DNA of 63,077 nt, filler included, from Platydemus manokwari (lineage: Eukaryota): NCBI GenBank assembly GCA_037951405.1. It is 5 parts of 5 records of this genome, joined end to end, with 100 filler letters (N's around TTAATTAATTAA, not from the genome) between each part and the next. Parts side by side here need not be neighbours in the genome. Positions count along the whole stretch, not along the records: positions 39,857 to 54,018 come from JBBMOY011514745.1; 4 more parts are not named here. One strand, 5' to 3'. The notes under the pieces were generated by a model. That model was given only the letters and a program-made list of their open reading frames with translations. It did not search any database and had not been told where the DNA came from. A program made the position numbers and the translations under genes. Positions within the stretch are counted from its first letter, which is position 1; the number at the start of each line of letters is the position of its first letter. Below are positions 39,857-54,018 of the stretch, in pieces.

Positions 39857-40122
39857 GGAACTATTGCTGTCATAGGGGTAAAAGGATTTATTAAGTATAT
39901 AATCTTTTGCGGTGGTTATTTTCGACTAATTTGGACCCTCTCTAAGAGAGGGTCCAAATATATGGGAACTATTGCTGTCATAGGGGTAAAAGGATTTATT
40001 AAGTATATAATCTTTTGCGGTGGTTATTTTCGACTAATTTGGACCCTCTCTTAGAGAGGGTCCAAATATATGGGAACTATTGCTGTCATAGGGGTAAAAG
40101 GATTTATTAAGCATATAATCTT

Positions 40123-40146
<24 letters not shown>
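39857..40146. repeat. 108-bp mitochondrial tandem repeat with hairpin (left contig end)
   Basis: Period 108 (GGAACT at 39857, 39965, 40073). Hairpins at 39929-39959 and 40037-40067. Confidence 0.95.
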
Positions 40147-41647
<1,501 letters not shown>

Positions 41648-41705
41648 TTAAGTTTAGTATTATTACGTTTCATTTACAATGAAAAAAGTCCGAAGGAAAC
41701 TTAAT
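41648..41705 (+). tRNA. trnV: tRNA-Val(TAC)
   Basis: Acceptor TTAAGTT/AACTTAA; loop TTTACAA. Confidence 0.85.
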
Positions 41706-42654
41706 TCTGAGAAGAGATAAGTAACAAAATGTAAATACCTTTTGCATAATGGTTTAACTAATAAATAAGATTTATTTCCTCGAAATTAAAAGATCTATTT
41801 TTTTTTTTTTTTGTAATATAATAGTATTGTTTTAAAAATAATTTAAAAATTTAAGATAGGTGTGAAAGGCTTTTCAATTTTAGTAATATCTAGATAAACT
41901 TTAAATGTATTTAGTACAGAATTATTTTCATTAAAAAAATGTTAAGATTTTTTTATAAAAGAAAGTTATAAGTTAACTAATAAATTTTGAATTATTTTTA
42001 TAATATTTTAAATTATTTAATAAATTTTTTTCTTAAAATTAAAGTTAGAAGTATTTAAATTATTTAAAACTTAAATAATGTTAAAATAAGTATACTACTA
42101 TAATTTATTAATAGGAATTCGGCAAAAATTTTATTCAACTGTTTATCAAAAACATAGTTTTATGGAGTATATAAAATGAATTCTGCCCAGTGAATTTTTA
42201 ACGGCCGCAGTACTTTGACTGTGCTAAGGTAGCATAATAAATTGACTTTTAATTGAGGTCTGGAATCAATGGAATAATGAATAAATTCTGTCTTTTAATA
42301 ATTTTATATAAATTGCTAATAAGGTGAAAAATCCTTTATAATAAAATTAGACGAGAAGACCCTAGGAATTTAAATTATTTTGTTGGGGCGACATTACAGC
42401 AATTAACCTGTAATTTTAAAATTTAAAACAAATTTTATTAATTTTAATTAAATTACCCTAGGGATAACAGCATAATTTAATAATAAGTTTGTGACCTCGA
42501 TGTTGGACTAGGAATAAATAAATATTAATGATATTTGTTTGTGTTCTGTTCGAACAAATTTTCCTACATGATCTGAGTTCAGACCGGCGTAAGCCAGGTC
42601 AGTTTCTATCTTTTAATAATTTATTATTAGTACGAAAGGACCATAATAAATTTT
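41706..42654 (+). rRNA. rrnL: Mitochondrial large subunit rRNA (16S)
   Basis: Conserved blocks CTGTTTATCAAAAACAT, GACGAGAAGACCCTA, ACCTCGATGTTGG and GATCTGAGTTCAGACCGG. Ends set by the flanking tRNAs. Confidence 0.95.
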
Positions 42655-42716
42655 TTTAACTTGGCAGAATATGCAGTTGATTTAGGGTCAAATTATAATA
42701 TTTATATTAGTTTCTT
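42655..42716 (+). tRNA. trnL1: tRNA-Leu(TAG)
   Basis: TGGCAGA D-arm; loop TTTAGGG. Confidence 0.8.
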
Positions 42717-42777
42717 AAATAGTTTATTTAAAACGTTAACTTTGGAAGTTATTAATCGGGAATTCTCGCTTTTGGGT
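42713..42777 (+). tRNA. trnP: tRNA-Pro(TGG)
   Basis: Anticodon arm TAAC-TTTGGAA-GTTA. Confidence 0.8.
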
Positions 42778-42836
42778 TATATACTTTATTTAGAAGAATT
42801 AGTTTGCATCTAATTGGAAGAGTTTTCTTGTGACCA
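42775..42836 (+). tRNA. trnA: tRNA-Ala(TGC)
   Basis: Acceptor GGTTATA/TGTGACC; arm ATTAG-TTTGCAT-CTAAT. Confidence 0.85.
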
Positions 42837-43276
42837 TGATAACTATAGTGATAATACTTTGCAATATGTTTTTATTTATTACTAATCCAATAGGTTTAGG
42901 GATGTTATTATTTTTATTGAGATTTTTTATAGTGTTAACTATAAGAATAATTATTAATACTTGATATGCTTATATATTATTTTTAGTATATATTGGAGGG
43001 TTACTTGTGATATTTATTTATATTTGTATAATTAGTAGAAATTTTAAATTAAATAAAATTGGACTATGGGAAATTATAAGAATATTGTTTTTGGGAATTA
43101 TATCATCACAATATTTAAGTAATCAAAAAATTATAATATATGTTGGAGTAAATATTAATGGGTTAGGGTTACCTATATTTTTATTTTTAAGATTAGTAAT
43201 TTATTTATTAATTTGTTTCTTTGTTATTATTAATATTATTTTAGGAGGTGGGATTAGATTTAAAATTGTATATTAA
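42836..43276 (+). CDS. nad6: NADH dehydrogenase subunit 6
   Basis: ATG start; WYAYMLFLVYIGGLLVMFIY; TAA stop. Confidence 0.9.
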
Positions 43277-43280
43277 TAAT

Positions 43281-44933
43281 ATAATTAATCGATTTACTTT
43301 ATTATTGAGTGTTTTTTGTGTTTCTTATATAGTACTTATATATAATATAATAATAATAAATTGTACAATTTTAATTGAATTAAATATTTTAAATATCTCG
43401 TCAATTAATTTTTTAATTTTGTTGGTTTTTGATAAAATTAGAATAAGTTTTAGATTTGTTGTAACTTTAATTTCATCTTGTGTATTTTCTTTTGCAAGAA
43501 ATTATATAAAAGAGGATATTTATTATAATCGTTTTATTATTATCTTATTAAGATTTGTAATTTCAATAAATATACTTATTTTTTCAGGTTCTATTTTTAT
43601 AATTTTAATTGGGTGGGATGGATTAGGAATTACGTCATTTGCTTTAATTATTTATTATCAAAATAAAGATTCTTTAGGGGCTGGGATATTAACATTGGTA
43701 ATTAATCGGTTAGGGGATGTTGTTATCGTATCTAGAATATTTTTATTGTTAATATTAAGTCAAATAAGTATTTTTCCTCTAAATGTAAATATATATTATT
43801 TAGTTTTAGTATTGTGTGTTGCTAGATTAACTAAAAGTGCTCAATACCCTTTTAGAAGTTGATTACCAGCTGCTATAGCAGCTCCTACGCCTGTGAGGGC
43901 TTTGGTTCATTCTTCAACCTTAGTTACAGCTGGAATTTATTTAATTATTCGATTAAGATTTAATATTCCACTTGATATTAATATTATAAGATTATTATGT
44001 TTTTGTGGTAGAATTACTTGTTTGTTAGGCGGTATAGCAGCAATTTGTGAAATAGATCTTAAAAAAATAATTGCACTATCAACTTTAAGACAATTAGGAG
44101 TAATAATATTTAGATTAGGAATAAACTACCCTTTAATGGCTTTATTTCACTTATATACCCATGCTATATTTAAAGCCTTATTGTTTTTAGTTGCGGGGAT
44201 AGTATTAATAATGACTTTTGGGACTCAGGATTTACGTTTATTAGGCGGAGTTTTATTAAAGTCTCCTATTTTAATTATTTTTCAAAATGTAAGTAGTTTA
44301 TGTTTAATTGGTGCGCCTTTTATAAGTGCTTTTTATTCTAAACATGGAATTTTAGAGTTAATATTAATATCAAATTTAAATATAATTTCTGTTCTAATCA
44401 TGTTTGTAGCTACATTTTGTACTGCTGTGTATGTGTTTCGTAGGCTTAAAGTTTTATGTTGAGGATATATTAAAATTAATTTAAATATAAGGTATATTAA
44501 TTTAGGTAATTATATACCTTTATTTATATTAATAATATTAGGAATTATAAGTGGTAAAATGTTCTTAATAATTAATGATTCAGTTATTATAAGATTTTAC
44601 ATCCCATCTATTATAAGAAGAATTATTAACTTAGTAAGTATTATTGGATTAAGGTTAGGAATAATTATAGCAAAAACGTTAAAAACTGAAAAGTTAAGAA
44701 CTTTGTTTTATTTAACTCCAATATGGAATGGATTAGTAAAGCCGTATTCAAATGTTTCTAAGTATATAAATTCTTTAGATTATGGGTGATTAGAACCAAA
44801 CTCTTTATTATATCCTAATTTTTATAAATTAATTATTAATATCTATAATTTAACATTATGGCCAAGTTTTAATATATATATATATATTCGTGGGACCTTA
44901 TTAATCTTAATTTTATGTTTTTTATTTTATTAA
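43281..44933 (+). CDS. nad5: NADH dehydrogenase subunit 5 (start 43281 or 43266)
   Basis: GWDGLG and [35 protein letters not shown]; TAA at 44931-44933. Confidence 0.95.
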
Positions 44934-45817
44934 ATATTATTACTTGCTTATGTGTATTATTATCAGTTGCATACTATACTTTATTAGAGCGGAAAATTTT
45001 AGGATATATTCAAATTCGTAAAGGACCAAATAAGGTTGGATTATTTGGATTATTCCAGCCATTAGCCGATGCATTAAAATTATTTGTTAAAGAAAAAATT
45101 TTGTTAATTGAAAGTAATATATTAATATTTTATTTGATTCCAATGTTTGGTTTTTTCTTAAGGTTAATAATTTGATATATTTATCCTAGATTTAATGCTG
45201 TTAAATTTATTATTTATAGATTACTTTTATTTTTTTGCATTTCTTCTTTAAATGTTTATATCACTATAATGGCTGGATGAGCATCAAATTCTAAATATGC
45301 ATTTTTAGGGGCTATTCGTGCTGCAGCTCAAACGATTTCTTATGAAGTAATAATAATTTTAATTATAATTTTTCCTGCTGTTATTATTTTAAGTTTGTGC
45401 TGACAAGATGCTTTAAATTTATTTTGTTATTTTATATTAATAATTCCTTTATTTTTAGTATGATTTACTAGAATTTTAGCTGAAACTAATCGTGCTCCAT
45501 TTGATTTTGCTGAGGGGGAATCAGAATTAGTTTCTGGGTTTAATATTGAATATCAAGGAGGTTTATTTGCTTTATTATTTTTAGGTGAGTACATAAGAAT
45601 TTTATTTATATCTATAACAAGGATTGTTTGATTTATAGGTGTATATAATTCTTTGTTTTATATTACATTTATTTTGATTATAAGATTAGTATTTTTATTT
45701 TGTCGTGCAGCTTTTCCTCGTTATCGTTATGACTTGTTAATAATATTGTGTTGAAAAAGATTTTTACCATTTTCTTTAGGGGTATTAATAATTTCAAGAG
45801 TTAGTATAATATGATAA
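44915..45817 (+). CDS. nad1: NADH dehydrogenase subunit 1
   Basis: [18 protein letters not shown] and [22 protein letters not shown]. Confidence 0.95.
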
Positions 45818-46113
45818 TTAATATATTAGTTTTATTATTATTGATTTTAATTTTATCTTTTATTTTTAATGCAAATCATATTATTAGATTATTATTAATT
45901 TTAGAGTCAATAATATTATTATTATTGGTTTATCTATTATTAATTTTAATTGAGGTTAATAGTAATCCTTATATATTTATTATAACATTAACATTAAGTG
46001 CATGTGAAGCTGCTCTAGGATTATCTATTTTAATTACAATAATGCGATATTATGGAAATGATTTTATTAGTTCAATTAGAAGATTAAGATGATTTGCAAA
46101 AATTACCTATTAA
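45811..46113 (+). CDS. nad4L: NADH dehydrogenase subunit 4L
   Basis: LSACEAALGLSIL...RYYGND; reads through TGA (Trp) to TAA. Confidence 0.92.
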
Positions 46114-47198
46114 AGAGTTAAGTGATTTACCTACACCTGTTAATATTTCAATTATTTGAAATAGAGGATCCATTTTAGGATTTATATTGGTTGTTCAATT
46201 AATTACTGGAATTTTTTTATCAATACACTATACTGCTGATTTAGTATTAACATTTAACTCTGTGGTTCATATTATACGGGACGTACCTGGAGGTTGATTA
46301 TTTCGTTTGATTCATGCTAATGGAGCTTCTTTCTTTTTTATTTTTTTATATATACATATAGGTCGTGGCATTTATTATCAAAGTTTTAATACTCAATCAC
46401 GTACTTGAATAGTAGGGTCAACTATTTTTTTATTATGTATAGCAACAGCATTTATAGGGTATGTTCTTCCTTGAGGCCAAATGTCGTTTTGAGGTGCAAC
46501 TGTTATTACTAATTTACTATCTGCAATTCCTTATTTTGGAAGTATGTTAGTGGAGTGAGTTTGAGGGGGATTTTCTGTTGGACAATCAACTTTAAACCGG
46601 TTTTTCTCAATTCATTTTATTCTTCCATTTTTAATTAGGGTAATAGCATTATTACATTTAGTGTTTTTACATGATAAAGGTTCAACAAATCCTTTAGGAG
46701 ATGTTAATCATATTAACAAAGTTCATTTTCATCCTTACTTTACTTGAAAAGATATTGTTGGGGTTTTAGTTGTATTATTTATACTATCAATTGTAGTATT
46801 TTTTTTTCCTACATTATTAAGTGACCCAGAAAATTATTTAATAGCAAACCCTATAGTAACTCCTGTGCATATTCAACCAGAATGATATTTTTTATTTGCT
46901 TATGCTATTTTACGTTCTATTCCTTCTAAGTTGGGGGGGGTAGTAGCTTTAGCCTTATCAGTATTTATTTTATATATTTTACCCTTAGGAAATTTTAAAT
47001 GAAATATTCCTTCAAGATTTAACATTTTTTTTCAAATTTTATTTTGAGTGTTAATTATTAACTTTATTTTATTAACATGATTAGGTGCTTGCCCAATTGA
47101 AGAACCTTATTTTTCTTTATCCCAACCATTAACATTACTATATTTTGTGGTTTTTTTAATATTAATTATTCAACCTTGAGTTATTAATAAATTTATAT
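46094..47198 (+). CDS. cob: Cytochrome b
   Basis: [33 protein letters not shown] and HIQPEWYFLFAY; incomplete stop T; TTG start inferred. Confidence 0.96.
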
Positions 47199-47259
47199 TT
47201 TTATTTAATTTATTAAAATATTTATTTGTCAAGTAAAAAATACCGTCAGGTAATTTTTA
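47199..47259 (+). tRNA. trnD: tRNA-Asp(GTC)
   Basis: Arm TTTAT-TTGTCAA-GTAAA. Confidence 0.78.
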
Positions 47260-47314
47260 GGTAATTTATTTAAAATAGTAAATTGCAAATTTAAAAAAGA
47301 TTCATCCCTTGATT
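47255..47314 (+). tRNA. trnC: tRNA-Cys(GCA)
   Basis: Arm TAAA-TTGCAAA-TTTA. Confidence 0.75.
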
Positions 47315-47374
47315 TATAGCTTAATTTAAAGCAAAGTCCTGAAGAGACTTATATAGGATTAATCCTTTTATCAG
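47310..47374 (+). tRNA. trnF: tRNA-Phe(GAA)
   Basis: TAGCTTAA D-arm; AAGTC-CTGAAGA-GACTT. Confidence 0.85.
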
Positions 47375-47375
47375 T

Positions 47376-48036
47376 ATGAGCTTATGAGGACAATTAAATT
47401 TATTAGACCCTTCATCTCCTATTCAATCAGAAATAATGTTATTTCATGATCATGCAATAATTCTATTAATTGGTATTTTTACAGTTGTTGGATTAATTGG
47501 AATAAAGTTTTCAATTAATAAATATTCTACTCGATTGGTACATGAAGCACAAACTTTAGAAATTATTTGAACTATCATTCCTGCTATTTTGTTATTATGA
47601 CTAGCACTACCTAGTTTACGACTTTTATATCTTTTAGACGAACAAAGAAATAACGGAATTATTTTAAAAGCAACAGGTCACCAATGATATTGAAGTTATG
47701 AATCGCCTACAAATAATATTAATAGTTTTGATTCATATATAATTCAAACTCCTGATTTAAAATTGGGGGATTTTCGTTTATTGGAAGTTGATAATCGACC
47801 TATAGTACCATTAGGGCTAGCTACTTCTGTAATTACAACATCTTCAGATGTTATTCATGCGTGAACTTTACCATCAATGGGAGTAAAAATGGATGCGGTT
47901 CCTGGGCGTTTAAATTCAATGGGTATATTTCCTCAGGTACCAGGTGTATATTATGGACAATGTTCTGAAATTTGTGGGGCTAATCATTCATTTATACCTA
48001 TTGCATTAGATGTAGTTAATTTAACGGATTTCATTT
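47376..48036 (+). CDS. cox2: Cytochrome c oxidase subunit II
   Basis: MSLWGQ start, GHQWYWSYE and [15 protein letters not shown]; incomplete stop T. Confidence 0.97.
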
Positions 48037-48097
48037 TTTTTGATGGCTGATGATAGGCGAAAAATTGTAAATTTTTTAATAGATTTTCTTCAAATTT
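48037..48097 (+). tRNA. trnY: tRNA-Tyr(GTA)
   Basis: TGGCTGA D-arm; loop TTGTAAA. Confidence 0.8.
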
Positions 48098-48153
48098 ATA
48101 AGTTAAGTAAACTAAAGGTCTTCAAAACCTTAAATAAAATTTTTTTAAATTTG
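48092..48153 (+). tRNA. trnW: tRNA-Trp(TCA)
   Basis: Acceptor AAATTTA/TAAATTT; AAGGT-CTTCAAA-ACCTT. Confidence 0.85.
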
Positions 48154-48214
48154 ATAAGTTAAGTTAAAAAAACTAAAAGTTTGTGGAACTTTAAATAATA
48201 TAGATTACTTATCT
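48153..48214 (+). tRNA. trnH: tRNA-His(GTG)
   Basis: Acceptor GATAAGT/ACTTATC; AAAGT-TTGTGGA-ACTTT. Confidence 0.87.
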
Positions 48215-48217
48215 TTT

Positions 48218-48279
48218 ATTTATTTAGTATAATTATTATAGTTACCTTCCAAGTAAAAGATTTCATTTGAAAATAAATA
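48218..48279 (+). tRNA. trnG: tRNA-Gly(TCC)
   Basis: Acceptor ATTTATT/AATAAAT; TTAC-CTTCCAA-GTAA. Confidence 0.85.
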
Positions 48280-48338
48280 TTTAGAAAAAATATTTTTCTT
48301 AGAAACTCAAATTTTCTCGTGCTTAACACCATCTAAAT
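48278..48338 (-). tRNA. trnQ: tRNA-Gln(TTG)
   Basis: Minus strand AGAAA-ATTTGAG-TTTCT; TGGTGT D-arm. Confidence 0.8.
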
Positions 48339-48395
48339 CAAAAGATTATCTTATTTAAAGCTCTTAAAACTTATGCATTTATCTGCCATTGAAAA
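48334..48395 (-). tRNA. trnL2: tRNA-Leu(TAA)
   Basis: Minus strand TGGCAGA D-arm; loop TTTAAGA. Confidence 0.8.
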
Positions 48396-48543
48396 AAAAA
48401 ATAAGTTTATGTTTACGACCTTTTATTAATTGGTTATATTTAATTGGATTATTAGGTGTATAAAAAATTAGAAAAATTACAAATAGTAATGATAAAGCAG
48501 TTAATAAAATTAAAAATCCTGATGAGGGGCTTAATTGAGGCAC
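48396..48543 (-). CDS. atp8: ATP synthase F0 subunit 8
   Basis: GTG start, MPQLSPSSG; 49 codons plus incomplete stop T. Confidence 0.88.
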
Positions 48544-48603
48544 CTTAAAAATATGAATATTTTTTAATTAACAGTTAAATGTTTTATTTTAAACTATTTT
48601 AAG
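48544..48603 (-). tRNA. trnN: tRNA-Asn(GTT)
   Basis: Minus strand TTAA-CTGTTAA-TTAA. Confidence 0.82.
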
Positions 48604-49246
48604 ACGGATGTTCAGTGGCATATAACCTAATTAATAATGTAAAAATATAAGCTTGAATAAATCTTACAAAAAATTCAAATAAAACATAACCTACAACTAA
48701 AAATAATACTATAATTTGAGGTAAAAAATTTATTGTTGTTAATAAGTTTGCTATTAAAGCTAATACAATGTGGCCTGCACTAATATTTGCTACAAGTCGT
48801 ACTGTTAAAGTTAAAGGACGAATAATAATTCTAATAGATTCAATTAAAATTAAAAAAGGTATTAATATTATAGGTGCTCCTGTAGGAGCAAGATGAGCAA
48901 TAGATTTTTTTGTTGATTTAATTCATCCTGAGGATAGTAATGTTAATCATATAATTATTGCTAAGGATCTATTAAATCAAAGGCTGGAAGTTACCCCAAA
49001 TGAATAAGGTGATAATCCGATTAAATTATTTAAAATTATAAAATATATAAGTGAAGATAATGCAAAGATTTTTAAAGGTCCATAAGGTGTCTTACCTCAC
49101 AATGAATTGATATTATTATTAATATAAATTATAAAATAATTTATTCAAGTTGAGTTTACTAATAATAAAAATAATAAAATAATTGAAATTCCTCATGATC
49201 ATAAAGATTGTATTCCATCTATTGAGCTAAATAAATCAGTTATCAT
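48604..49246 (-). CDS. atp6: ATP synthase F0 subunit 6
   Basis: MMTDLFSSMDG start; RPLTLTVRLVANISAGH; incomplete stop T. Confidence 0.95.
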
Positions 49247-49307
49247 AAAAGGAAAAAGTAAAATTTAAAGATTAAGGCCGAAACTTAATTGGATAATCCA
49301 TCCTTTT
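49247..49307 (-). tRNA. trnR: tRNA-Arg(TCG)
   Basis: Minus strand TTAAG-TTTCGGC-CTTAA. Confidence 0.78.
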
Positions 49308-49308
49308 T

Positions 49309-49370
49309 ATTTTAAAAGAATTTCTTAATTTTATCTTGAAAAGATAATGTAATACATTTACTATTAAAAC
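49309..49370 (-). tRNA. trnE: tRNA-Glu(TTC)
   Basis: Minus strand TTATC-TTTTCAA-GATAA. Confidence 0.78.
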
Positions 49371-50032
49371 AAAAGAAACAGCTTCAGCTACTTCTACTAT
49401 GTTACGACTTATCTCCTTTAAAAGGAGAGTGACGGGCGATTTGTGCACTAAATTTTTATTATTCATAATAAATTATTAATTAAAATTACTTTTAAGTCCA
49501 GCTTAAATAGTTTTTAATAAGTAAAAAAGAAAATTTTTAATATTGTAACTCGCTGAGTTCTAATTTATTAACTGCACCATGATCTGTTTTTAAAACTTTT
49601 TTAATAAAAGTTTTAAACGATGGTATACAAGTTTTAAAAATTAGATTAATTTGTTTGGTGGCTATCAAATTAAAAAGTAAGTTCCCCTAAAGGTAAATTT
49701 AGCCGCCACATTTTTTAAGTTTTGATTTTTTAATTATAGTACTTTTTAATTTGATTTATATTTATAATAGTAGGGTATCTAATCCTAGTTTTAAAATAAA
49801 TTTCTTTTAATAATAAGTTTATTTAAAATTTTTCTATTTTACTTGAAAAAATTTTTGAAAAATTATTTAATTAAAATATTTAATATTTGGTAGTAGTATG
49901 ACCGCGGCTGCTGGCACTAAATTTGCCACCATTATAGCTTTAGTAATATTTCTACTATATAAAAAATTATTAGCTGACTAACCATTGAGGTCATTTCTCG
50001 CAGAGTATCATAATTCCATTAAAATGAAGTGG
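49371..50032 (-). rRNA. rrnS: Mitochondrial small subunit rRNA (12S)
   Basis: Minus strand GTGCCAGCAGCCGCGGT, AGGATTAGATACCCT, CAAATCGCCCGTCAC and AAGTCGTAACATAGTA. Confidence 0.95.
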
Positions 50033-50093
50033 TCTTTTGAGGTAATACCATGTTTGGGTTATGAGCCCAATAGCTTAAATAGCTTATCAAAAG
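50033..50093 (-). tRNA. trnM: tRNA-Met(CAT)
   Basis: Minus strand TTGGG-CTCATAA-CCCAA. Confidence 0.9.
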
Positions 50094-50439
50094 ATATTGA
50101 CATTCAATCTAAAGCACCTTGATACCATTCATAAAATAAGCCTAGTATTAGGATTAATATAAAAAATAAAAAAAATGTTATAGTTTTAATATTAATAAAG
50201 TTGAAAATTATTCTTAGGAGTGGAAATAGTAAAGAAACCTCAATATCAAAAATTAAAAATAATACTACTAATACAAAAAAACGAGTAGAAAATGGGGAAC
50301 GCATATTTCTTAAAGGATCAAATCCACATTCAAAGGGAGAATTTTTTTCAGAGCAGTATGTGGTAGGTCAAGAAGTATAATTATATATAATTAATAAAAT
50401 TATAGAAATTAATATTACTATTATAGAATTATATAGCAT
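50094..50439 (-). CDS. nad3: NADH dehydrogenase subunit 3
   Basis: ATG start; SPFECGFDP, FLIFDIE and EWYQGALDW; incomplete stop T. Confidence 0.95.
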
Positions 50440-50494
50440 TTTAAACGTACTATATAGTACATTAAGGATTTTCAAAATCCCTTTAAGTTTAAAA
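50440..50494 (-). tRNA. trnS2: tRNA-Ser(TGA), D-arm reduced
   Basis: Minus strand GGAT-TTTGAAA-ATCC. Confidence 0.72.
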
Positions 50495-50539
50495 TTGAAG
50501 CTGCTAACTTTGATTTGGGGAATACTCCACTTAAATTTG
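50485..50539 (+). tRNA. trnS1: tRNA-Ser(GCT), D-armless
   Basis: GAAG-CTGCTAA-CTTT. Confidence 0.75.
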
Positions 50540-50545
50540 AGATTA

Positions 50546-51847
50546 TTGTTTATATTAATATGTTCTTGTATTAATAACAATTGAAGAATTTCAATTATTA
50601 CATTATTATTGAGATTAATAATTAGGTTAATGAATTTAAATCAAAGGTTTTTTTATGGAGATATAATATTTATATTAAGAGAAAATTTATCAAGATTAAT
50701 AGTTTTTTTAAGCATTTTTTTATGTTTGATTTCACTAATTTCTACTTCAAGTAATAAAATATATACATATATTTTTATAATTATAGTATTAAGACTAATT
50801 TTAACTATAGCATTTTTAATAAATAATATTATACTATTTTATATTTTTTTTGAAATTTCTTTAATTCCTACATTAGCATTAATTATTGGTTGAGGCTATC
50901 AACCAGAACGTTTACAAGCAGGATCATATATAATATTATATACTGTAGGAGCATCCTTACCTTTATTAATATTTTTATTAAATATTAGATATATTACTGG
51001 TAGTTTTAATTTGTATTTAATTCAAACTATTAACTTAAATATTAATATGTTTTGATGGTTATTGGCAATAATTACTGCATTTTTAGTAAAGTTACCTATA
51101 TATATATATCATTTGTGGTTGCCTAAAGCTCATGTCGAAGCTCCATTAGCAGGTTCAATGATTTTAGCTGGTATTTTATTAAAATTGGGAGGTTATGGAT
51201 TATATATTATATTTAATTCATTTGATGTTATTAATATAAAATATGAGTTTTTATTTATTAGAATGTTGAGTTTATGAGGAGGATTATTAGCATCTTTTAT
51301 ATGTTTACGTCAAACTGATTTGAAAGCATTTGTAGCATATTCATCAGTTGCTCATATAAGCTTAATTGTTGTAGGGGTAATTATAAATACTATTTGAGGG
51401 TTAATTAGAGTTAAAATTATTTTATTTGCACATGGATTTACTTCGCCTTGTTTATTTTTATTGGCTTATATTAGATATATAAAATCGGGGAGACGAAGAT
51501 TATTATATAGTAGAGGCTTATTAAATACCTATCCTTTAATTACTTTATTTTGATTTATTTTATTGAGAGTAAATATAGCAGCTCCTCCTAGACTTAATTT
51601 AATAGGTGAATTATTTATTATACCTATATTATGAATAATTAGGGGTATAAGAGTATTTGTAATAATATTATTAATATTATTTAGGGCTATTTATAATATA
51701 TATTTATATACAAGCATTAATCATGGAGGATTTAATAAGTATAATTTGTCAAAAGTTCAAATAAAATCTTCAGAGCTAGTAAGTATTATTATCCACTTAA
51801 TTCCATTACTATTAATTTTAAAAGCACAAATTTTTATAATTTCATAA
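50546..51847 (+). CDS. nad4: NADH dehydrogenase subunit 4 (start approximate)
   Basis: [11 protein letters not shown] and [30 protein letters not shown]; TAA at 51845-51847. Confidence 0.95.
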
Positions 51848-51858
51848 GAATTCTTATG

Positions 51859-51919
51859 ATTCTAAAAGAAAAATCTTATTTTGGTTTACAAAACCAATGT
51901 TTTAATAAACTAGTTAGAA
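51859..51919 (-). tRNA. trnT: tRNA-Thr(TGT)
   Basis: Minus strand TTGGT-TTTGTAA-ACCAA. Confidence 0.85.
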
Positions 51920-52697
51920 ATGAACCTCATCAATAAATTCTAATATATAAAAATAATCAAACCACATCAACAAAATGTCAATATCATGCAGCTGCTAAAA
52001 ATCCAACATGATGAGTACTTCTAAAATGAAATTTATATAATCGTAATAAACAAATAGTTAAAAATGTTGCTCCTACAGCTACGTGAAGCCCATGAAATCC
52101 TGTTGCTATAAAGAAAGTGCTTCCATATACACAATCTGCAATCGAAAATGCGGTTTCTGTGTACTCTCCATATTGTAAAAATAAAAAATAAAATCCTAAT
52201 AAAACAGTAATTAACAATCCTTGAATAGCTGAATTATATTTTTTTTCTTCAATACTGTGATGAGCTCAAGTTACTGTTACTCCAGATAGTAATAACACAG
52301 CCGTATTTAATAAGGGTACTTGAAAAGCTTTTAAAGTAAAGATACCAATTGGAGGTCAAACGGCCCCTAACTCAATTGTAGGGGATAATCTTCTATGAAA
52401 ATAGGCTCAAAAGAAAGCAAAAAAAAAACAAATTTCAGAAACAATAAATAGTATTACACCAATTTTTAAACCTTTAATAACATAAGAATTATGAAAGCCT
52501 TGATATGTTGATTCTCGAGTAATGTCACGTCATCATGTGTAAGCAATAATTATTGTAGTTAATAAACCAAAAACTAAAAGAATAGATGAGTTTTGACGAA
52601 TAAATAAAATTAAACCAATAGGTATGCATATAATTCCAATTGAGCCTAGAATAGGTCAAGGACTAAATTCAACTAAATGAAATGGTGATTTTGTCAT
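51920..52697 (-). CDS. cox3: Cytochrome c oxidase subunit III
   Basis: [24 protein letters not shown] and WYWHFVDVVW; incomplete stop T. Confidence 0.97.
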
Positions 52698-52738
52698 TTT
52701 TAGAAAAATTTTTTAATTTAAATTTTATATAAAATATT
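52698..52738. promoter_or_regulatory. Short AT-rich non-coding region between divergent cox3 and trnI (putative origin/promoter)
   Basis: ~41 bp with one G and an ATTTTATATAAAAT palindrome. This is the position usually proposed as the control region in pulmonates. Confidence 0.5.
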
Positions 52739-52802
52739 AAAGCAGCCGCCGGAGGTACGGGTATCATTGATGTTGATAAATTCAAAATTTTTTTGCTGCT
52801 TT
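52739..52802 (+). tRNA. trnI: tRNA-Ile(GAT)
   Basis: Acceptor AAAGCAG/CTGCTTT; TATCA-TTGATGT-TGATA. Confidence 0.87.
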
Positions 52803-53711
52803 TGAGGTTAATAACTTTATTTTTTATAATTATAATTATTATTAGTTCTATTGTATCATTATCTTCTTCTAGGTGACTAATTTATTGAGTCGGTATAGAG
52901 TTTGGGTTTCTTAATATATTTCCTATTATATATAACTATAGATCATTAATAATCAGTGAGGCAGCAATTAAGTATTTTTTGATTCAATCATTAGCAAGTA
53001 TTATAATTTTTTTTGCTGGATCATATATTTTTATATTATATATTGGTAATATATTTTCCATAATTTTTTTATTAATTGGATTAATTATAAAACTTGGTAT
53101 ATTTCCATTTCATTTTTGAGTAATCCCTGTAATAAGCGGACTCTGATATATGCAATTGGGATTTCTTTTGATCCCTTTAAAAATTCCTCCTTTAGGATTA
53201 ATTAATTTAAGTATTTTTGATAACATTTTTATAATTATTTTGATTATTTCATTGCTTACTATGATTATAGGGTCATTTCTAGGTAATAACTGTTCTAATG
53301 TTCGTAGCTTATTAGCATCTTCTTCAATTAATCATTCTGGTTGAACTGTAGTAGCTTCATTAATTGGTTGTATATGAATATATTTTTTGGTATACTGTTT
53401 AATATTAATAATTACTCTGTCGTTTATATTATTTAATAATAGAATTATAAGGGCATTTATAGTACTAAGATTAAGAGGATTGCCCCCTTTTATATTATTT
53501 TTTGTAAAATTATTAGTACTCTTTATTATAATAGAATTTTATTCAATTTATATTATTTTGGTTCCGCTTTTAAGTGCTGTTTTTAGTTTAAATTTCTATT
53601 TAAAATTAAGTTATTCTTTTTATTTAAATATAAAAAAAAATAAATTGTATATAATATTTAATTTATTAATTTTAAATTTAGTAGGAGGTTTATTTATTAT
53701 ATTATTATTAT
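52802..53711 (+). CDS. nad2: NADH dehydrogenase subunit 2
   Basis: EAAIKYFLIQS, KLGMFPFHFW and SLSGLPPF; TTG start; incomplete stop T. Confidence 0.93.
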
Positions 53712-53772
53712 TTTTTTATGGCTGAGTTAAGCGATGGATTTTTAATCCATTTAGAGATTTATCTTTTGCGGT
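53712..53772 (+). tRNA. trnK: tRNA-Lys(TTT); 3' acceptor strand largely unpaired
   Basis: TGGCTGAG D-arm; ATGGA-TTTTTAA-TCCAT. Confidence 0.82.
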
Positions 53773-54018
53773 GGTTATTTTCGACTAATTTGGACCCTCT
53801 CTTAGAGAGGGTCCAAATATATGGGAACTATTGCTGTCATAGGGGTAAAAGGATTTATTAAGTATATAATCTTTTGCGGTGGTTATTTTCGACTAATTTG
53901 GACCCTCTCTAAGAGAGGGTCCAAATATATGGGAACTATTGCTGTCATAGGGGTAAAAGGATTTATTAAGTATATAATCTTTTGCGGTGGTTATTTTCGA
54001 CTAATTTGGACCCTCTCT
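53761..54018. repeat. 108-bp mitochondrial tandem repeat with hairpin (right contig end)
   Basis: Hairpins at 53788-53818 and 53896-53926; the third copy is cut at the contig end. Confidence 0.95.

What the first reader, a model, noticed from the sequence alone, without database searches (positions are those of the whole stretch)
39857..40146. 108-bp hairpin array between trnK and cox1 that repeats the cox1 start (decoy starts)
Seen: on the circle, trnK is followed by at least 3 units and only then by the real cox1 (53761-54018 plus 39857-40146). Each unit is 29 bp (ATCTTTTGCGGTGGTTATTTTCGACTAAT = end of the trnK T-arm plus cox1 codons 1-8) and 79 bp of new sequence. It contains a 31-bp palindrome, ATTTGGACCCTCTCT-N-AGAGAGGGTCCAAAT. 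Every copy of the TTG start is in frame with cox1 (108 = 36 codons) but meets TAA within the unit. Established: in pulmonates trnK normally abuts or overlaps cox1, and tRNA excision yields a nearly leaderless mRNA. Inference: this molecule either needs a new processing signal for the cox1 5' end, possibly the hairpin, or translates past at least 324 nt of structured leader. The array may be a newly arisen control region/origin, or a palindromic insertion amplified through its 29-bp direct repeat.
Basis: partly seen in the sequence, partly recalled or inferred. Interest (0 to 1): 0.72.

Follow-up and report, generated by a model that had tools for sequence, protein, structure and literature searches.

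The report
Hairpin tandem repeat before snail cox1
A land-snail-type mitochondrial genome has three or four copies of a 108-base repeat between tRNA-Lys and cox1, each with a perfect hairpin and a copy of the first eight cox1 codons; it looks like a young, slippage-made length variant rather than a new kind of control element.

Summary
The piece is one compact stylommatophoran-type mitogenome contig, 14,162 bp, that breaks inside a 108-bp tandem array. Each unit is a 29-nt copy of the trnK 3' end plus cox1 codons 1-8, followed by 79 nt that include a 31-nt perfect palindrome. Each decoy TTG is in frame with cox1 and stops at a TAA inside its unit.

The first 195 nt of the contig equal its last 195 nt. 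The circle therefore has 3 units, or 4 with the alternative 87-nt overlap. Copy number is not fixed by the contig.

The closest relative I could fetch (L001, 74% nt identity) has trnK running straight into cox1 with no array, so the array is a lineage-specific insertion. The 79-nt insert matches nothing else in this genome, in L001 or in the public collections scanned.

I found no support for a tRNA, a dispersed mobile element, an origin-type skew break, or masking of the decoy starts by structure.

Best reading: a hairpin-bearing insertion amplified by replication slippage through its direct repeats. It is akin to the tandem tRNA arrays known in helicid snails. The decoy starts are a by-product. 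Reads could not be examined, so an assembly artefact or heteroplasmy remains open. Interest is modest.

The parts
53712..53774 (+). tRNA-Lys (anticodon TTT). Its T-arm 3' strand and poorly paired 3' acceptor strand lie in the first 29-mer. The 5' acceptor strand is TTTTTTA.
   Evidence: ARAGORN -mt; aligned to the L001 trnK
53761..53868 (+). Unit 1 (108 nt): 29-mer 53761-53789, decoy TTG 53766-53768, palindrome 53788-53818 with centre T at 53803, in-frame TAA 53859-53861
53869..53976 (+). Unit 2 (108 nt): palindrome 53896-53926 with centre A at 53911; the decoy ORF stops at that centre (12 codons)
53977..54018 (+). Start of the next unit; the contig ends one base before the variable palindrome centre. 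53824-54018 is an exact duplicate of 39857-40051 (redundant contig ends).
   Evidence: 195-nt exact end overlap
39857..40009 (+). Redundant copy of the end of unit 1 (39857-39901) and of unit 2 (39902-40009; palindrome 39929-39959, centre A at 39944; TAA 39943-39945)
40010..40117 (+). Last unit: decoy TTG 40015-40017, palindrome 40037-40067 with centre T at 40052, private C at 40112, in-frame TAA 40108-40110 (12 nt before the real start)
40118..40146 (+). Final 29-mer, carrying the real cox1 start (TTG 40123-40125) and codons 1-8
   Evidence: alignment with cox1 starts of relatives
40123..41647 (+). cox1, running to trnV at 41648; an incomplete stop codon is inferred
   Evidence: PF00115 hits, 94% aa identity to the L001 piece
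52698..52738 (.). cox3-trnI spacer (41 nt, AT-rich). This is the conventional candidate origin in stylommatophorans and the only other sizeable non-coding stretch in this genome.
   Evidence: literature

Best explanation
The array is a lineage-specific non-coding tandem repeat, that is, a mitochondrial length variant.

Origin (inferred). In the ancestor, trnK overlapped the cox1 start. A 79-nt segment of unknown origin, carrying a perfect 15-bp-arm palindrome, came to lie there, flanked by a 29-nt direct duplication of the junction. Replication slippage then multiplied it to 3-4 copies. The slippage would be favoured by the direct repeats, first 29 nt and then 108 nt long, and by a hairpin stable enough to form on single-stranded DNA.

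Consequences (shown). trnK and cox1 no longer overlap. Each has its own copy of the shared 29 nt. Every internal copy leaves a short dead-end ORF of 12 or 31 codons that begins like cox1.

Expression (inferred). trnK is cut out and repaired by A addition, as in other land-snail tRNAs. cox1 is then reached either by a further tRNA-independent cut or by internal initiation. The same genome must already do one of these for nad5, nad1, nad4L and cob.

Function. I take the array to have none of its own: neutral or mildly costly, probably variable in copy number, and young or homogenised.
For: - Real, non-chance structure: TRF scores 566 and 509. The palindrome exceeds every random control. The hairpin folds at -22.6 kcal/mol as RNA (z = -6.0). 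The whole 108-nt unit folds at -15.3 kcal/mol as ssDNA (z = -4.3).
- Derived state: L001 has trnK running into cox1 with no insert, collinear with the window minus the array.
- Young or homogenised: only two variable sites among the units, and all 29-mers are identical.
- Three distinguishable unit types (T/T, A/T and T/C at unit positions 43/103) argue against a simple assembler loop of identical copies.
- No sign of gene function. ARAGORN finds no tRNA at its default threshold. There is no long ORF and no Rfam match. The insert resembles nothing else in the genome, trnL2, the nad2 tail/trnK or L001.
- The genome is otherwise gap-free and keeps the usual cox3-trnI spacer.
- Precedent: tandem arrays of tRNA-sized units with flanking direct repeats and length heteroplasmy in Cepaea, Candidula and C. 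hortensis, attributed to slipped-strand mispairing (PMC11177401).
- tRNA-less starts already exist in this genome.
- The trnK 5' acceptor strand TTTTTTA fits the A-addition editing described for land snails (PMC4284800).
Against: - No reads could be examined, so copy number, heteroplasmy and even the presence of the array in most molecules are unverified.
- The origin of the 79 nt is unknown.
- An essential gene sitting behind at least 324 nt of structured leader with three decoy starts should be costly. Its persistence, with some divergence between copies, could mean it is tolerated because it does something.
- Only one relative with the junction was available, and it is distant (74% nt identity).
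- Slippage itself is inferred, not observed.
Confidence: 0.6

Rival explanations
1. Assembly artefact or unrepresentative molecule. The array, or its copy number, comes from mis-resolution of a repeat or palindrome by the assembler, from a minor heteroplasmic length variant, or from a nuclear copy of mitochondrial DNA mixed into the assembly.
For: - The contig breaks inside the array and its ends are redundant by 195 nt, with an alternative 87-nt overlap, so copy number is ambiguous.
- The 3' end stops exactly one base before the variable palindrome centre, as expected at a graph branch.
- No independent copy of this species' sequence was found.
Against: - Both unique junctions are present: trnK into unit, and unit into cox1.
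- The units carry three distinct variant combinations rather than identical looped copies.
- All 29-mers match the functional mitochondrial sequence exactly, and all 13 protein genes are intact, which does not look like a decayed nuclear copy.
- The insert is unlike the sequencing adapters I know (from memory, not tested).
Confidence: 0.15
2. New or additional replication origin or control element. The hairpin array has been recruited as an origin (like the vertebrate light-strand origin) or as a promoter region.
For: - It is by far the largest non-coding stretch in a gap-free genome.
- It contains a very stable stem-loop.
- At 4-fold sites the three genes upstream (nad4, cox3, nad2) show almost no GC skew (29 G/25 C) against 109 G/30 C elsewhere (p = 0.0012).
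- The control region of stylommatophorans is still unidentified.
Against: - It is absent from relative L001, so it is not the ancestral origin.
- The conventional cox3-trnI spacer is retained.
- The skew signal rests on a grouping chosen after seeing the data, and it vanishes with all third positions (p = 0.63).
- + strand GC skew does not change sign anywhere.
- The unit is richer in G+C than the genome, not AT-rich.
- The hairpin loop is about 3 nt with no T-run, unlike the vertebrate light-strand origin (established knowledge).
Confidence: 0.12
3. RNA punctuation substitute. The hairpin, or a tRNA-like fold of the unit, is recognised by mitochondrial RNases and defines the cox1 mRNA 5' end, or it hides the decoy starts.
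For: - At a relaxed threshold (80%) ARAGORN draws a cloverleaf in each unit, using the palindrome core as an anticodon stem with loop TAA.
- The whole unit folds into a long rod that pairs the decoy UUG.
Against: - No tRNA is called at the default threshold, and the unit has no similarity to the real trnL2.
- The 14-15-bp hairpin would out-compete the 5-bp anticodon stem.
- The outer stem of the rod is no better than shuffles (p about 0.13). The real start is not predicted to be more open than the decoys: mean unpaired probability 0.30 against 0.23.
- The hairpin ends 55 nt before the real TTG.
- The other tRNA-less junctions in this genome have no special hairpins.
Confidence: 0.08
4. Mobile palindromic element, like the G+C-rich hairpin elements of fungal mitochondria, that inserted at the trnK/cox1 junction.
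For: - The palindrome is G+C-rich relative to the genome (45% against 24.7%).
- The insert has no detectable source in the genome.
- Relative L001 carries many short G+C-rich palindromes in a large repeat region elsewhere.
Against: - The element occurs only in this array, with no dispersed copies.
- It has no match in L001.
- Exact-pattern scans found nothing: palindrome core; a second piece of the insert.
- A 29-nt flanking duplication is far longer than typical target-site duplications (established knowledge).
Confidence: 0.05

Closest known systems
Tandem tRNA-gene arrays with length heteroplasmy in helicid land snails (tRNA-Val up to 12 copies in Cepaea nemoralis, 24 in Candidula rugosiuscula; tRNA-Thr in C. 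hortensis; PMC11177401)
   Same: Stylommatophoran mitogenome; head-to-tail copies of a roughly tRNA-sized unit next to cox1; flanking direct repeats; slipped-strand mispairing proposed as the cause.
   Different: The unit here is not a tRNA gene. It sits at the trnK (5') side of cox1 rather than the trnV side. It duplicates the cox1 start codon and contains a perfect palindrome, whereas those authors stress that their repeats are direct and form no stem-loop. Heteroplasmy was not testable here.
Variable-number tandem repeats in animal mitochondrial control regions (general knowledge; examples cited within PMC11177401)
   Same: High-identity tandem units with predicted secondary structure; expansion and contraction by slippage.
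   Different: The array is not in a recognised control region. It lies between two overlapping genes and copies parts of both.
Vertebrate light-strand origin stem-loop (established knowledge)
   Same: A stable stem-loop between a tRNA gene and cox1.
   Different: No T-rich loop (about 3 nt); present in several tandem copies; absent from the relative; no robust skew break.
Large degenerate repeat region in relative L001 (L001:12450-14768)
   Same: A related snail mitogenome with lineage-specific non-coding repeats carrying short G+C-rich palindromes.
   Different: Different place (after trnH), different sequence, much larger (at least 2.3 kb) and degenerate (60-90% between copies).
G+C-rich palindromic mobile elements of fungal mitochondria (established knowledge)
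   Same: A G+C-rich hairpin inside an AT-rich mitochondrial genome.
   Different: Not dispersed; no family found.

Membership tests
Slippage-type mitochondrial tandem repeat (length-variant array) | Head-to-tail direct copies of high identity | tested here: met
   Period 108, 98-99% matches; copies in register
Slippage-type mitochondrial tandem repeat (length-variant array) | Derived insertion relative to related genomes | tested here: met
   L001 has trnK running into cox1 with no insert
Slippage-type mitochondrial tandem repeat (length-variant array) | Copy number varies within or between individuals | not testable with these tools
The contig itself allows 3 or 4 units.
Land-snail tandem tRNA-gene arrays (Cepaea type) | The unit is an intact tRNA gene | tested here: not met
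   No tRNA in the unit at the ARAGORN default. A weak cloverleaf appears only at the 80% threshold. No similarity to trnL2 or trnK.
Land-snail tandem tRNA-gene arrays (Cepaea type) | Direct repeats flank the unit | tested here: met
   Identical 29-mers bound every 79-nt insert
Mitochondrial control region / replication origin | Conserved position in related genomes | tested here: not met
   Absent from L001. The cox3-trnI spacer is the one conserved in length: 41 nt in both.
Mitochondrial control region / replication origin | Break or gradient in strand compositional skew at the site | tested here: inconclusive
   4-fold sites suggest a break (p = 0.0012, grouping chosen after seeing the data). 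All third positions do not (p = 0.63). There is no sign change.
Mitochondrial control region / replication origin | AT-rich, with a stem-loop whose loop can prime synthesis (T-run) | tested here: not met
   Unit 36% G+C against 24.7% for the genome; loop of about 3 nt
Mitochondrial control region / replication origin | Initiation of DNA or RNA synthesis mapped there | not testable with these tools
   Needs experiments
Mobile palindromic mitochondrial element | Several dispersed copies in one genome or copies in other genomes | tested here: not met
   Found only in the array. Absent from L001 and from exact-pattern scans of three collections.

The most novel reading that the evidence does not exclude
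The hairpin array is not junk. It would be a newly recruited functional element, either an extra replication origin or a tRNA-independent RNA-processing or translation-control signal. Such an element would let an animal mitochondrion express cox1 from behind a leader of at least 324 nt that is structured and carries decoy starts. It would also have resolved the ancestral trnK/cox1 overlap.
Probability: 0.12. Interest if true: 0.6.

Novelty: new member of a known kind. Interest (0 to 1): 0.3.

Why it matters
If real, the molecule is a small natural experiment. An essential, normally almost leaderless mitochondrial mRNA would sit behind three copies of its own start codon and three very stable hairpins. 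Mapping the cox1 5' end in this snail would show how a molluscan mitochondrion finds a start codon that has no tRNA in front of it. That question is also open for the nad6-nad5-nad1-nad4L-cob block.

In practical terms, the array is a likely site of length heteroplasmy and of assembly breaks, and it could serve as a population marker. It does not by itself locate the long-sought stylommatophoran control region.

Tried and rejected
- tRNA or pseudo-tRNA origin of the unit. ARAGORN at default finds nothing. A relaxed run gives a weak 'Leu(taa)' cloverleaf. Alignment to the real trnL2 (48333-48396, minus strand) is no better than shuffles (329 of 500 shuffles score at least as high).
- Decayed duplicate of the nad2 tail plus trnK. 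The local alignment score of 19 is reached by 129 of 1000 shuffles.
- Source elsewhere in the genome or in L001. Best scores of 29 and 26 are within shuffle ranges.
- 'Decoys masked, real start open'. The outer stem is not significant and the predicted accessibilities are similar.
- Hairpin punctuation as a genome-wide system. The four tRNA-less junctions have only background-level local folds.
- Skew evidence for an origin is not robust.
- Rfam: no match at gathering thresholds.
- Looking for the species or close kin.
  - Exact-product look-ups were blank.
  - The NAD2 C-terminal search was blank.
  - DNA patterns were absent from metagenome, viral and prokaryote-genome collections.
  - Other long COX1-bearing contigs turned out not to be snails.
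- Literature: no description of a trnK-cox1 array was found.

Full report
WHAT THE PIECE IS

Places 39857-54018 form one 14,162-bp contig with no N. ARAGORN in metazoan-mitochondrial mode, with relaxed runs on three gaps, finds all 22 tRNAs. Translation with the invertebrate mitochondrial code gives 13 intact protein genes.

The gene order is: cox1, V, rrnL, L1, P, A, nad6, nad5, nad1, nad4L, cob, D, C, F, cox2, Y, W, H, G, then Q, L2, atp8, N, atp6, R, E, rrnS, M, nad3 and S2 on the minus strand, then S1, nad4, T(-), cox3(-), I, nad2, K. This is the compact arrangement of stylommatophoran land snails.

Genes and tRNAs fill the molecule. The only spacer of note outside the array is 41 nt between cox3 and trnI. 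G+C content is 24.7%. I could not name the species.

THE OBSERVATION

Tandem Repeats Finder reports a 108-nt period at both contig ends, with 98-99% matches. Each unit is a 29-nt block followed by 79 nt.

The 29-mer is the 3' strand of the trnK T-stem, the poorly paired 3' acceptor strand, and cox1 codons 1-8. trnK lies at 53712-53774 and the real cox1 TTG at 40123.

The 79 nt hold a perfect palindrome with 15-bp arms and one central base.
- As RNA the hairpin folds at -22.6 kcal/mol, z = -6.0.
- As single-stranded DNA the whole 108-nt unit folds at -15.3 kcal/mol, z = -4.3.
- Random genomes of the same first-order composition never gave arms longer than 13.

The decoy TTGs are in the cox1 frame. 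They end at a TAA after 31 codons in units with centre T, and after 12 codons in the unit with centre A, where the stop is the palindrome centre itself.

CORRECTIONS

First, the contig ends are redundant. The first 195 nt equal the last 195 nt, and the first and last 87 nt also match. Simply abutting the ends would be 21 nt out of register. The circle implied is 13,967 bp with three units whose centres read T, A, T, or 14,075 bp with four units (T, A, A, T).

Second, the copies differ at two sites: the palindrome centre, and position 103 of the unit, which is C only in the last unit, at 40112.

Because the centre is the only unpaired base, the A and T forms are exact reverse complements. Neighbouring palindromes are therefore 31-nt perfect inverted repeats (I6-I9), and the predicted RNA fold uses this inter-unit pairing. 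A point mutation and a hairpin-mediated flip cannot be told apart from this.

IS THE ARRAY ANCESTRAL?

A COX1 fragment search led to a 14,768-bp metagenome contig, L001. Its COX1 piece is 94% identical in protein, and the contig is 74% identical in DNA over about 12.6 kb.

There, trnK runs directly into cox1. The alignment shows that the window equals L001 once n x 108 bp are removed. The array is therefore an insertion in the window's lineage.

Two shorter contigs of relatives (L002, L003) begin within 0-7 nt of the cox1 start. That says nothing about arrays.

WHERE DO THE 79 NT COME FROM?

Nothing in the rest of the genome, on either strand, matches better than shuffled controls. The same holds for L001, for the true trnL2, and for the nad2 tail plus trnK, which a duplication-and-decay origin would predict. 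Exact patterns were absent from the metagenome, viral and prokaryote-genome collections. The origin is unknown.

IS IT A GENE OR A KNOWN RNA?

There is no Rfam match and no tRNA at the ARAGORN default. At a relaxed threshold ARAGORN draws a 'Leu(taa)' cloverleaf that uses five of the fifteen palindrome pairs as anticodon stem. The full hairpin is far more stable, and the sequence is unrelated to trnL2. One frame is open through the A-type unit but closed by TAG in the T-type units.

IS IT AN ORIGIN?

For:
- It is the largest non-coding stretch.
- It has a strong stem-loop.

Against:
- It is missing in L001.
- The conventional candidate, the cox3-trnI spacer, is retained at 41 nt in both genomes (literature).
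- The unit is richer in G+C than the genome.
- The hairpin loop is about 3 nt.
- The + strand GC skew stays positive all round.

At 4-fold sites, nad4, cox3 and nad2 show almost no GC skew (29 G/25 C) against 109 G/30 C elsewhere (p = 0.0012). That would put a break at the array. However, I chose the grouping after seeing the data. With all third positions the difference disappears (p = 0.63), and L001 shows no such pattern. I treat this as inconclusive.

DOES COX1 NEED A NEW SIGNAL?

Land-snail tRNAs that overlap the next gene are cut short and completed by A addition, and their 5' acceptor strands are U-rich (PMC4284800). The trnK here starts TTTTTTA, which fits.

But nad6, nad5, nad1, nad4L and cob follow one another with no tRNA. 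Their junctions have only background-level folds. This mitochondrion therefore already forms or uses tRNA-less starts.

I tested whether the decoys are hidden and the real start exposed.
- The unit folds into a long rod that pairs the decoy UUG.
- The outer stem is not better than shuffles (p about 0.13).
- The predicted unpaired probability around the real start (0.30) is close to that of the decoys (0.23).

The idea is not supported.

BEST READING

The array is a hairpin-bearing insertion flanked by a 29-nt duplication of the trnK/cox1 overlap. It was multiplied by replication slippage, and is young or homogenised.

The nearest described cases are the tandem arrays of tRNA-Val and tRNA-Thr in Cepaea, Candidula and C. 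hortensis. These show length heteroplasmy, have flanking direct repeats, and are attributed to slipped-strand mispairing (PMC11177401). The present array differs in place and in content: it is not a tRNA gene, it includes the start of cox1, and it contains a palindrome.

I found no paper describing a trnK-cox1 array. Because the species is unknown to me, I cannot exclude that its own publication mentions it.

LIMITS

Earlier findings were not open. Only one relative with the junction was available.

Confidence:
- 0.6 for the slippage-made, functionless array.
- 0.15 for an artefact or minor variant.
- 0.12 for an origin or control role.
- 0.08 for RNA punctuation.
- 0.05 for a mobile element.

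Noticed in passing
L001:12450-14768: After trnH, the related mitogenome contig carries at least 2.3 kb of degenerate repeats: families of about 75, 230-250 and 600 nt, with copies 60-99% alike. They are studded with short G+C-rich palindromes such as CTCCCCGGGGAG. The contig ends inside a repeat (14671-14768 is 99% identical to 13511-13608). atp6 was not found in it by tblastn, so that genome is larger than the contig and has its own lineage-specific non-coding region at another place.
   Followed up: partly
window 48153-48280 versus L001:12281-12450: The tRNA order is W-H-G-Q in the window but W-(53-nt spacer)-G-H in L001. The L001 spacer aligns with the window's trnH and looks like its decayed remnant (GTG anticodon region reads ATA). 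This fits a duplication of H/G followed by alternative losses.
   Followed up: partly
window 53712-53774: trnK has a 5' acceptor strand TTTTTTA, while the encoded 3' strand (TGCGGTG) gives only G-T pairs and mismatches. This is the pattern expected for 3' editing by A addition as described in land-snail mitochondria.
   Followed up: partly
L002:1-45 and L003:1-50: Two independent short contigs of related snails (a JGI sample and a Logan assembly) begin within 0-7 nt of the cox1 start codon. This could reflect an mRNA 5' end if the libraries are RNA, or a break at the trnK junction.
   Followed up: no
window 50537-53711 (nad4, cox3, nad2): GC skew at 4-fold degenerate sites is near zero in these three genes (29 G/25 C) and strongly positive elsewhere (109 G/30 C). 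The effect is not seen with all third codon positions, nor in L001.
   Followed up: yes
window about 49589-49617 (inside rrnS): This is the second-longest perfect hairpin of the genome (12-bp arms, 5-nt loop), presumably a ribosomal RNA helix.
   Followed up: no
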